A stretch of 64,000 bases of DNA, from contig NW_026928818.1 of assembly GCF_032062105.1 (NCBI RefSeq), positions 62,001-126,000 of the forward strand, in the 5' to 3' direction. Both the position numbers and the translations under genes were made by a program. Of this stretch, positions 30,680 to 32,035 are shown piece after piece (position 1 is the first letter of the stretch; each line of letters begins with the position of its first letter). Source of the stretch: Saccostrea cucullata (taxonomy: Eukaryota). The notes beneath the pieces are model-generated. The model made no database searches, was not told where the DNA came from, and saw only the letters and a list, made by a program, of their open reading frames with translations.

Positions 30680-31198
30680 AATATTTTTACCTTTGCCATT
30701 GCAACCAGTGCCCCAATATGAGTCCGCAACATTATGCATCAGTACCCTTTTGTTTGTGCTAAGAAGGTATTTTTTGAACTCAGCACATTGGTTGAATTTA
30801 ATAGCCAAAACTTTTAGCATAATTTTGTTTTTGATTGAATGCCAATGAGAGGTGGTATTTACAAGTTTTGAAATTTGTTTACTTATTTTAGCTGTCGGAG
30901 CGTTTTGAATTTGGTTTGCCAAATAGGGGTCAGAGTGCTCGACAGCTTTTAAGTACTGATACAAATGTTCCGAACTCTGAAATATAAGACCCTGGTACAT
31001 TAGAACACATGGATAGAAGTTTGAGAGGATATGGTGCTCTCCCTTGAAGTAGATGGGAGAGCTGGGAGTTGGATTTGGAACAGGAGAGGAGCTTGCAGTT
31101 GGATGTTTAATAGATGCTGTGACAGGAGGAGGAGATGCTGAGCGAGGAGGAGGAGAGGGAGGAGAAGCAGTGCGAGGAGGAGGAGAGGGAGGAGATGA
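30680..31198 (-). pseudogene. Pro/Ser-rich linker plus NADAR (YbiA-like) domain, truncated at both ends
   Basis: IYFKG...LSNFYPC...FQSSEHLYQYLKA...W...IMLKVLAIKFNQ...LLST...DSYWGTG...GKGKN; the final LG.ILM..R helix is missing. Confidence 0.85.
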
Positions 31199-32035
31199 AC
31201 AGAGTAACAAAAGACAAAACAAAAGAACCCCCAATCTTTCTTGGACCTTTATTTATTCATGACAATAGTGACTTTGAGTCATACAGTAATTTCTTCTTTC
31301 ATTTGAGGACAAAACTTTCAGACACTGATAAGTCAAAATTAATCTTTGGGTCAGATGAAGAAAAGGCACTAGTAAAAGCAATTACTGAATGTTTTCCTGA
31401 ATCAAACCATCTTTTGTGTAAGAGACATCTTTATCAAAATACAAAACAAAAACTTGTTGATGATAGTGTAGACAAGGCAGACAGACAAAAAATATTGGAC
31501 CTCATTTTCAGTGATGACGGGTTGATAAATTCTGACGACAGTATTTGTTTTGATCACATTTCGGAGCAAATAGAAGACCTATCAAAGGACCTTTCAGGAA
31601 AATTTCTAAAATATTTCAAAAAAATTCAACCAAATCTCAAAGAAAAAGTCAACAACCCCATCAGGCATGACATTGTTGATAAACCGTGGACAAATAATAA
31701 TTCTGAGTCATTAAATCATGTCTTAAAACAAGCAATTGATTGGAAATCAAAACCACTCCTTGATTTGGTTAATATACTGACAACACTTATAGAATCACAA
31801 TTTAAGACAGATTATTTTATTAACATATTAAATAATCTCATTTAATTGACGAAAAGTCTTGTTGTTGATATACTTATACTAAGTACGAGTTAATTTGGTC
31901 GCAACATTACTTGGTACGACTTATCTAATACAATCAACTTCCGTTTCCGTTGTTGGTAAAATTGAGGAGGACCTGCAAAACAAAATTTTCTATCACAATA
32001 ATTATCTGCTGCCATCCGAGGTGCTTTCCTAAAAA

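What the first reader, a model, noticed from the sequence alone, without database searches (positions are those of the whole stretch)
30680..31300. NADAR (YbiA) domain as apparent cargo of a Mutator transposon
Seen: a stop-free NADAR domain behind a Pro/Ser-rich linker on the minus strand abuts, back to back at ~31198, a MULE transposase that lacks its N-terminus; this is the pattern of an internal deletion through two divergent genes. Known: NADAR enzymes include hydrolases that remove ADP-ribose from guanine in DNA (DarT1-NADAR systems), and some bivalves have guanine-specific DNA ADP-ribosyltransferases (CARP-1, pierisin family). Inference: a MULE family carrying a counter-defence or repair enzyme, a pairing I do not recognise as described. 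The usual LVE motif before D.YWG reads LMH here, so activity may be altered.
Basis: partly seen in the sequence, partly recalled or inferred. Interest (0 to 1): 0.8.

Follow-up and report, generated by a model that had tools for sequence, protein, structure and literature searches.

The report
Mutator transposon carrying a NADAR gene
A cut-and-paste DNA transposon carries, as a conserved passenger, a gene of the NADAR family (enzymes that strip ADP-ribose from guanine in DNA and RNA), a cargo I found described only for retrotransposons; it may protect the transposon from a host chemical attack, but that function is untested.

Summary
Confirmed. The window holds a wrecked copy of a 10.6-kb Mutator (MULE) element. 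An intact copy elsewhere in the genome has ~250-bp TIRs, a 9-bp TSD, a PHD-OTU ORF plus transposase on one strand, and a divergent single-ORF SGNH-NADAR-SGNH gene. The window copy lost ~4.7 kb internally, lost the last NADAR helix, and has an Ngaro-like insertion in its transposase. The same SGNH-NADAR cassette (63-68% identical) sits inside a distant MULE lineage (transposases ~22% identical) in Mytilus californianus, also with TIRs and a 9-bp TSD. NADAR is under purifying selection (dN/dS about 0.1-0.2). The His of 'LMH' aligns with the catalytic Glu of YbiA; His there is the known phage-NADAR state and occurs in 66 of 191 related domains, so it does not indicate inactivity. Close relatives include LINE ORF1 domains, the likely donor. 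NADAR on retrotransposons is published (PMC12477816), and this scan noted it on Tx1 LINEs in this genome; I found no report for DNA transposons. Counter-defence against a host guanine ADP-ribosyltransferase is plausible but untested; no such host enzyme was found here.

The parts
30677..31060 (-). NADAR domain residues 1-128 of the cargo gene, last helix missing. Catalytic-site equivalents: Glu31 (30968-30970), Lys38 (30947-30949), His109 (30734-30736), Asp113 (30722-30724)
   Evidence: Pfam; 100% identical in protein to intact copies; residue columns; break
31061..31197 (-). Remnant of the Pro/Ser 30-bp repeat linker that joins SGNH1 to NADAR in the intact gene
31198..31200 (.). Junction of the ~4.7-kb internal deletion (three unmatched bases); removed SGNH1, both gene starts, the PHD-OTU ORF and transposase residues 1-380
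31201..31801 (+). MULE transposase from residue 381; first catalytic Asp (by motif) lost, second Asp, CxxH and Glu kept
   Evidence: 99.7% DNA identity to the intact copy
31802..35717 (+). Inserted Ngaro-like tyrosine-recombinase element without RT: YR ORF 32036-33283, SGNH ORF to 33938, split direct repeats of 191 and 622 bp, TTAA at both ends; not part of the MULE
35718..36004 (+). C-terminal rest of the MULE transposase to its stop codon
36082..36628 (.). 90-bp tandem repeat inside the MULE, also present in the intact copy and in more distant MULE loci
38173..38424 (.). Terminal inverted repeat of the MULE; the other TIR is missing from this copy
38425..38666 (.). End of a different high-copy repeat next to the TIR; its last 23 bp recur inverted at 30654-30676, exactly where the NADAR is cut off

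Best explanation
Shown: the locus is a deleted copy of a MULE family whose intact form carries a divergent, single-ORF accessory gene (SGNH hydrolase with intact catalytic motifs, Pro/Ser linker, His-type NADAR, linker, degenerate SGNH). The gene is kept by purifying selection and occurs in two distant MULE lineages (probability about 0.95). Inferred: the cassette came from a LINE ORF1-type NADAR/SGNH module and moved between elements (about 0.6). Inferred: the NADAR is a catalytically competent N-glycosidase that removes ADP-ribose from guanine bases (about 0.6), and it benefits the element by clearing host-made ADP-ribose marks from its transcript or its single-stranded or excised DNA, as phage and RNA-virus NADARs are proposed to do. 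The confidence given is for the whole chain. The window copy itself is probably dead.
For: Intact copy G000:C18254 about 115076-125682: TIRs 92% alike, 9-bp TSD, both genes open. 9-bp TSDs at three further independent insertions. All ten close NADAR copies long enough to judge extend into other element sequence, including ~83%-identical old copies. M. californianus: SGNH-NADAR plus MULE-SWIM-Ulp1-PHD between ~520-bp TIRs with a perfect 9-bp TSD; the same family in an ENA contig has NADAR directly upstream of a Pfam-positive MULE. Cargo 63-68% identical, transposases 22% over 206 aa. dN/dS 0.08-0.14 between lineages; within the family 0.20 for NADAR (Fisher p 0.002) against 0.79 for the linker (p 0.55). 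Model pLDDT 97.7, TM 0.85 to YbiA and to the ADP-ribose-bound 8BAU, Z 17-19. Residues needed in characterised NADARs are kept. All NADAR families tested, including His-type T4, remove guanine ADP-ribose from DNA and RNA. CARP-1 homologues occur mainly in bivalves.
Against: No activity data. No ADP-ribosyltransferase was seen in the element and none was found in the genome; the Scabin-like search rang nowhere, controls included. In vitro activity is common to all NADARs, but YbiA and phage types did not rescue DarT1 toxicity in cells, so it does not define the biological role. Sister MULE families show no NADAR in 8-10 kb upstream of the transposase, one has a lone SGNH, so NADAR is dispensable for transposition. 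Poly(A) RNA holds only 7 and 11 reads of about 12 million. dS between lineages is near saturation, so those ratios are rough. Tree support for the LINE link is weak.
Confidence: 0.4

Rival explanations
1. The cassette is a LINE ORF1-derived nucleic-acid or membrane-handling module. NADAR binds or processes RNA (or reads ADP-ribose) and SGNH binds lipid; together they help element transcripts or complexes, with no host transferase involved.
For: NADAR and SGNH occur together in LINE ORF1 proteins. An RNA-processing role is proposed for retrotransposon NADARs (PMC12477816). The nematode NADAR protein SNA-3 acts in trans-splicing. A lipid role is proposed for ORF1 esterases (PMC3905857, title only).
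Against: A cut-and-paste element has no RNA transposition intermediate or ORF1-type particle, yet selection persists in two MULE lineages. The catalytic Glu, Lys and Asp equivalents are conserved.
Confidence: 0.25
2. The NADAR is an active hydrolase but its natural substrate is a small molecule or a protein (free ADP-ribose derivatives, riboflavin-pathway intermediates, PARP-made adducts). The fused SGNH esterase could act on an acetylated form of the same metabolite. The benefit is metabolic or against PARP-based defence.
For: YbiA-type enzymes act on riboflavin intermediates and are proposed to act on soluble ADP-ribose derivatives; RNA-virus NADARs are largely mutually exclusive with macrodomains. 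The domain lacks the extension of DarT1-linked NADARs (146-aa core only).
Against: Characterised NADARs were specific for base-linked ADP-ribose and inactive on phosphate-end adducts. No evidence here for any substrate.
Confidence: 0.25
3. Neutral hitch-hiking: a LINE or host fragment was captured by chance (Pack-MULE-like), or the two genes in the window were joined by chance.
For: Relatives of the domain are often LINE ORF1s. MULEs capture foreign DNA. Many non-autonomous copies show no NADAR match.
Against: Intact 872-aa frame inside TIRs with a TSD; the same cassette in a distant lineage in another species; dN/dS far below that of the linker; no free donor copy seen among close hits.
Confidence: 0.04

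Closest known systems
NADAR domains in Tx1 LINE ORF1 of Crassostrea gigas and in Ectocarpus Gypsy Pol (PMC12477816)
   Same: A YbiA-like NADAR carried by a eukaryotic transposon, in molluscs among others; this genome has many such Tx1 ORF1s.
   Different: Here the carrier is a DNA transposon with no RNA intermediate, the domain is in a separate divergent gene fused to SGNH domains, and it does not group with this genome's Tx1 NADARs.
E. coli YbiA (2B3W) and Phytophthora nicotianae NADAR (8BAU)
   Same: Same fold (TM 0.85, Z 17-19); the first Glu, the Lys and the Asp of the ADP-ribose site are kept.
   Different: The family-defining Glu of the last strand is His; the loop after it is one residue shorter; multi-domain transposon gene.
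Phage T4 gp30.3 NADAR
   Same: His at the catalytic Glu/Asp position; carried by a selfish element.
   Different: No PF08010 match for this protein; His arose more than once among transposon NADARs, so this is not evidence of kinship.
DarTG1 (DarT1-NADAR) toxin-antitoxin
   Same: Same superfamily; offers the candidate chemistry.
   Different: No linked transferase seen, no Asp at the defining site, no N-terminal extension.
SGNH/GDSL cargo of transposons: CR1/L2 ORF1 esterase, Ngaro hydrolase, texim in fish Helitrons (PMC4021074)
   Same: SGNH hydrolase as a recurrent passenger, including on a DNA transposon.
   Different: Here on MULEs and fused to NADAR; a search for Mutator, MULE, SGNH and transposase together found no paper.
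Pack-MULEs
   Same: Foreign coding DNA between MULE TIRs.
   Different: Pack-MULEs carry host gene fragments in non-autonomous elements; this cargo is a whole, selected gene in an element with its own transposase.

Membership tests
Mutator/MULE superfamily | MULE DDE transposase | tested here: met
   PF10551 and PF00872 over cut-off; D, D, CxxH and E motifs located in the intact copy
Mutator/MULE superfamily | Long terminal inverted repeats | tested here: met
   about 250-268 bp, 92% alike
Mutator/MULE superfamily | 9-bp target-site duplication | tested here: met
   four independent insertions here, one in M. californianus; not testable for the window copy, which lacks one end
NADAR superfamily | YbiA fold and Pfam NADAR match | tested here: met
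NADAR superfamily | Catalytic Glu and Lys (E88 and K95 of E. coli C7 NADAR) | tested here: met
   Glu31 and Lys38 by alignment
NADAR superfamily | Hydrolysis of guanine-linked ADP-ribose | not testable with these tools
   needs an assay
YbiA subfamily | Glu in the last strand | tested here: not met
   His109 aligns with that Glu in 2B3W and 8BAU (definition)
Phage gp30.3 subfamily | His in the last strand | tested here: met
Phage gp30.3 subfamily | Sequence match to PF08010 | tested here: not met
   no hit at E 0.05 for the cargo protein
DarTG1 antitoxin (BC4488 type) | Linked DarT1 gene, Asp at the defining site | tested here: not met
   no transferase among the element's long ORFs; His instead of Asp
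SGNH hydrolase | Ser, Asn and Asp-x-x-His motifs | tested here: met
   first domain keeps them by motif reading; second domain lacks all three
Pack-MULE | Host gene fragment in a non-autonomous element | tested here: not met
   whole ORF in a transposase-bearing element, under selection; no host donor among close hits

The most novel reading that the evidence does not exclude
Molluscs and other invertebrates use guanine ADP-ribosylation (CARP-1-like transferases) as a defence against mobile DNA, and an exchangeable NADAR(+SGNH) cassette is the counter-defence, picked up repeatedly by LINEs, MULEs and perhaps other DNA transposons: an animal counterpart of the DarTG1 versus phage NADAR conflict.
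Probability: 0.2. Interest if true: 0.9.

Novelty: new variant of a known kind. Interest (0 to 1): 0.62.

Why it matters
The one published idea for transposon NADARs is that they process the RNA intermediate of retrotransposition. A selected NADAR on cut-and-paste elements, which have no such intermediate, points to a need shared by both classes, such as removing a host-made nucleic-acid mark. It gives a small, well-folded protein to assay, and a way to ask what the unexplained guanine ADP-ribosyltransferases of bivalves are for. It also shows a large His-type NADAR group in invertebrate mobile elements, a state described so far for phages.

Tried and rejected
Chance juxtaposition: rejected by the intact copy. 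LMH as inactivation: rejected; the pairwise alignment paired Met with the Glu, but the profile alignment and 191 domains place His there. Origin from this genome's Tx1 ORF1 NADARs: not supported; they form their own well-supported group (quick tree, 147 columns, many open forks). Helitron cargo in Tegillarca granosa: a His-type NADAR-SGNH gene lies 2.7 kb from Helitron Rep/Pif1 ORFs, but a second locus with the same gene has no Helitron ORFs within 10 kb, so this stays unproven. Word search with the isolated domain: blank; with the full protein, one hit; the large search was used once for that reason. Scabin-like family search: uninformative. CARP-1 itself could not be searched because no tool gave its sequence. 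Only 150 of 293 NADAR candidates and 40 of 237 TIR candidates were scored, so counts are lower bounds.

Full report
Observation. The minus-strand ORF at 30596-31234 matches Pfam NADAR (E 1.5e-20) and the plus-strand ORF at 31135-31845 matches MULE and Transposase_mut. They overlap only through a GA-rich repeat that reads as a Pro/Ser linker on the minus strand.

The intact element. The domain has protein-identical copies on other contigs, in open frames of 653 and 908 codons. On contig C18254 the NADAR and a 99%-identical transposase lie about 4.8 kb apart on opposite strands. That copy spans 10,607 bp, has TIRs 92% alike over 268 bp, and is flanked by a 9-bp duplication. It holds a 406-aa ORF with weak PHD and OTU matches followed by a 675-aa transposase ORF on one strand. 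On the other strand is a single long ORF: SGNH hydrolase, Pro/Ser repeats, NADAR, Pro/Ser/Ala linker and a second SGNH-like domain. The first SGNH keeps its Ser, Asn and Asp-x-x-His motifs; the second lacks them (motif reading).

What happened in the window. About 4.7 kb is deleted between 31197 and 31201, so the transposase starts at residue 381. An RT-less Ngaro-like element fills 31802-35717, with TTAA at both ends and split direct repeats; the transposase resumes at 35718. The TIR is at 38173-38424. On the left, element sequence stops at 30677, which removes the last NADAR helix, the second SGNH and the other TIR. This copy is therefore probably non-functional.

Consistency in the genome. 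A 5.25-kb derivative (C14337 and C12507, same TSD, so one insertion) keeps NADAR and the second SGNH in frame between both TIRs with almost no transposase left. Two more insertions have 9-bp TSDs. Of eleven close NADAR copies examined, ten extend into other parts of the element, several into the transposase or TIR, including old copies at about 80-85% identity; one is too short to judge. Sister MULE families (63-67% identical transposases) show no NADAR in 8-10 kb upstream, and one has a lone SGNH gene. Distant NADAR hits in the genome are mostly Tx1-type LINE ORF1s: all 12 extra loci fetched and most earlier ones read that way.

Outside this genome. Mytilus californianus LOC127738033 (SGNH plus half a NADAR) is joined by a deletion to the C-terminal part of a MULE-SWIM-Ulp1-PHD ORF, between inverted repeats of about 520 bp with a perfect 9-bp TSD. 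A contig of the same family has the whole, frameshifted NADAR directly upstream of a Pfam-positive MULE on the same strand. The cargo domains are 62-68% identical to ours, the transposases only 22% over 206 residues, and gene orientation differs. This suggests the cassette moved between MULE lineages (inference). Members of that second lineage in this genome are on contigs that do not appear among the scored NADAR hits.

Selection and expression. dN/dS for NADAR is 0.08-0.14 against the other lineage, with dS near saturation. Within the family it is 0.20 (9 synonymous, 7 non-synonymous changes; Fisher p 0.002), against 0.79 for the adjacent linker. Two poly(A) libraries gave only 7 and 11 reads of about 12 million; contigs from one RNA run and one presumed RNA run cover much of the ORF and little beyond its stop. 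Transcription is thus suggested, low or tissue-limited, and not proven.

Active site. The model is confident (pLDDT 97.7) and matches YbiA and the ADP-ribose-bound oomycete NADAR (TM 0.85, Z 17.0 and 18.8). Glu31, Lys38 and Asp113 align with the residues that bind and hydrolyse ADP-ribose in PMC11543638 or with the conserved Asp before the Trp-Gly motif. His109 aligns with the subfamily-defining Glu. That position is Glu in YbiA, Asp in DarT1-linked enzymes and His in phage NADARs, and the T4 enzyme is active on guanine ADP-ribose in DNA and RNA (PMC11125620, PMC11833690, PMC12945103). His occurs in 66 and Glu in 79 of 191 related domains.

Origin. The large search returned many 400-800-aa proteins, 16 of which also match the first or second SGNH. 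Three looked up are LINE ORF1s upstream of endonuclease-RT ORFs, one of them in the same weakly resolved group as the MULE domain (SH-aLRT 94). The genome's own Tx1 NADARs group elsewhere, and His arose separately among them. A LINE ORF1 donor is the simplest reading but is not shown.

Mechanism. The most likely single reading is an active guanine de-ADP-ribosylase that protects the element's nucleic acid from host transferases (0.4). CARP-1 activity is known from clams and homologues are mainly bivalve, but no such gene was found here and the search was uninformative. Rivals are an ORF1-derived binding module (0.25), a hydrolase for small molecules or proteins (0.25) and neutral capture (0.04).

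Known versus new. NADAR on retrotransposons is described in PMC12477816, with an RNA-processing hypothesis. SGNH on a DNA transposon is described in PMC4021074. Searches found no paper on NADAR in a DNA transposon or SGNH in a MULE; the library omits many subscription papers, and Repbase was not searched. Earlier notes of this scan report NADAR on Tx1 ORF1 in this genome and the Ngaro insertion; none reports the MULE link. Verdict: real, selected cargo; new variant of a known kind; interest 0.62.

Noticed in passing
window:31802-35717: RT-less Ngaro-like element with open tyrosine recombinase and SGNH ORFs and near-identical split direct repeats (99.8% and 98.4%), inserted at TTAA in the MULE transposase.
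   Followed up: partly
G000:C22818:24400-24830 (L011:1502-1930) and C9704: Low-copy His-type NADAR, 37% identical to the cargo, in an open frame bounded by acceptor- and donor-like sites between exon-like ORFs of a host-like gene; possibly a domesticated NADAR exon. Splicing not tested.
   Followed up: partly
L015-L030, L075-L086: Many Tx1-type LINE families with NADAR at the end of ORF1; Glu and His versions of the catalytic position coexist, His forming one subgroup.
   Followed up: partly
L089:1068-10912 and L100:8651-19529 (Tegillarca granosa): His-type NADAR-SGNH gene divergent from Helitron Rep/Pif1 ORFs at one locus, and in three copies without Helitron ORFs nearby at another.
   Followed up: partly
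L094:4636-12998: SGNH-linker-NADAR ORF with the same order as the MULE cargo, followed by ORFs without Pfam match that look transposase-like (from memory, Academ-like; untested) and are split by a LINE.
   Followed up: no
L063:1930-2499: A sister MULE carries a lone SGNH gene on the opposite strand between the PHD and OTU parts of its upstream ORF.
   Followed up: partly
window:38425-38666 and 30654-30676: A high-copy repeat end (40 or more matches) abuts the MULE TIR, and a 23-bp inverted match to its terminus sits at the NADAR break; the MULE may be nested in that element.
   Followed up: partly
window:39509-40400: ORF with a SAP domain and a SWIM-like Cys motif, of a type often seen in DNA transposons (own knowledge).
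   Followed up: no
L061:7180-7420: The PHD-OTU ORF and the transposase ORF overlap in different frames; a splice or frameshift may join them. Not tested.
   Followed up: no
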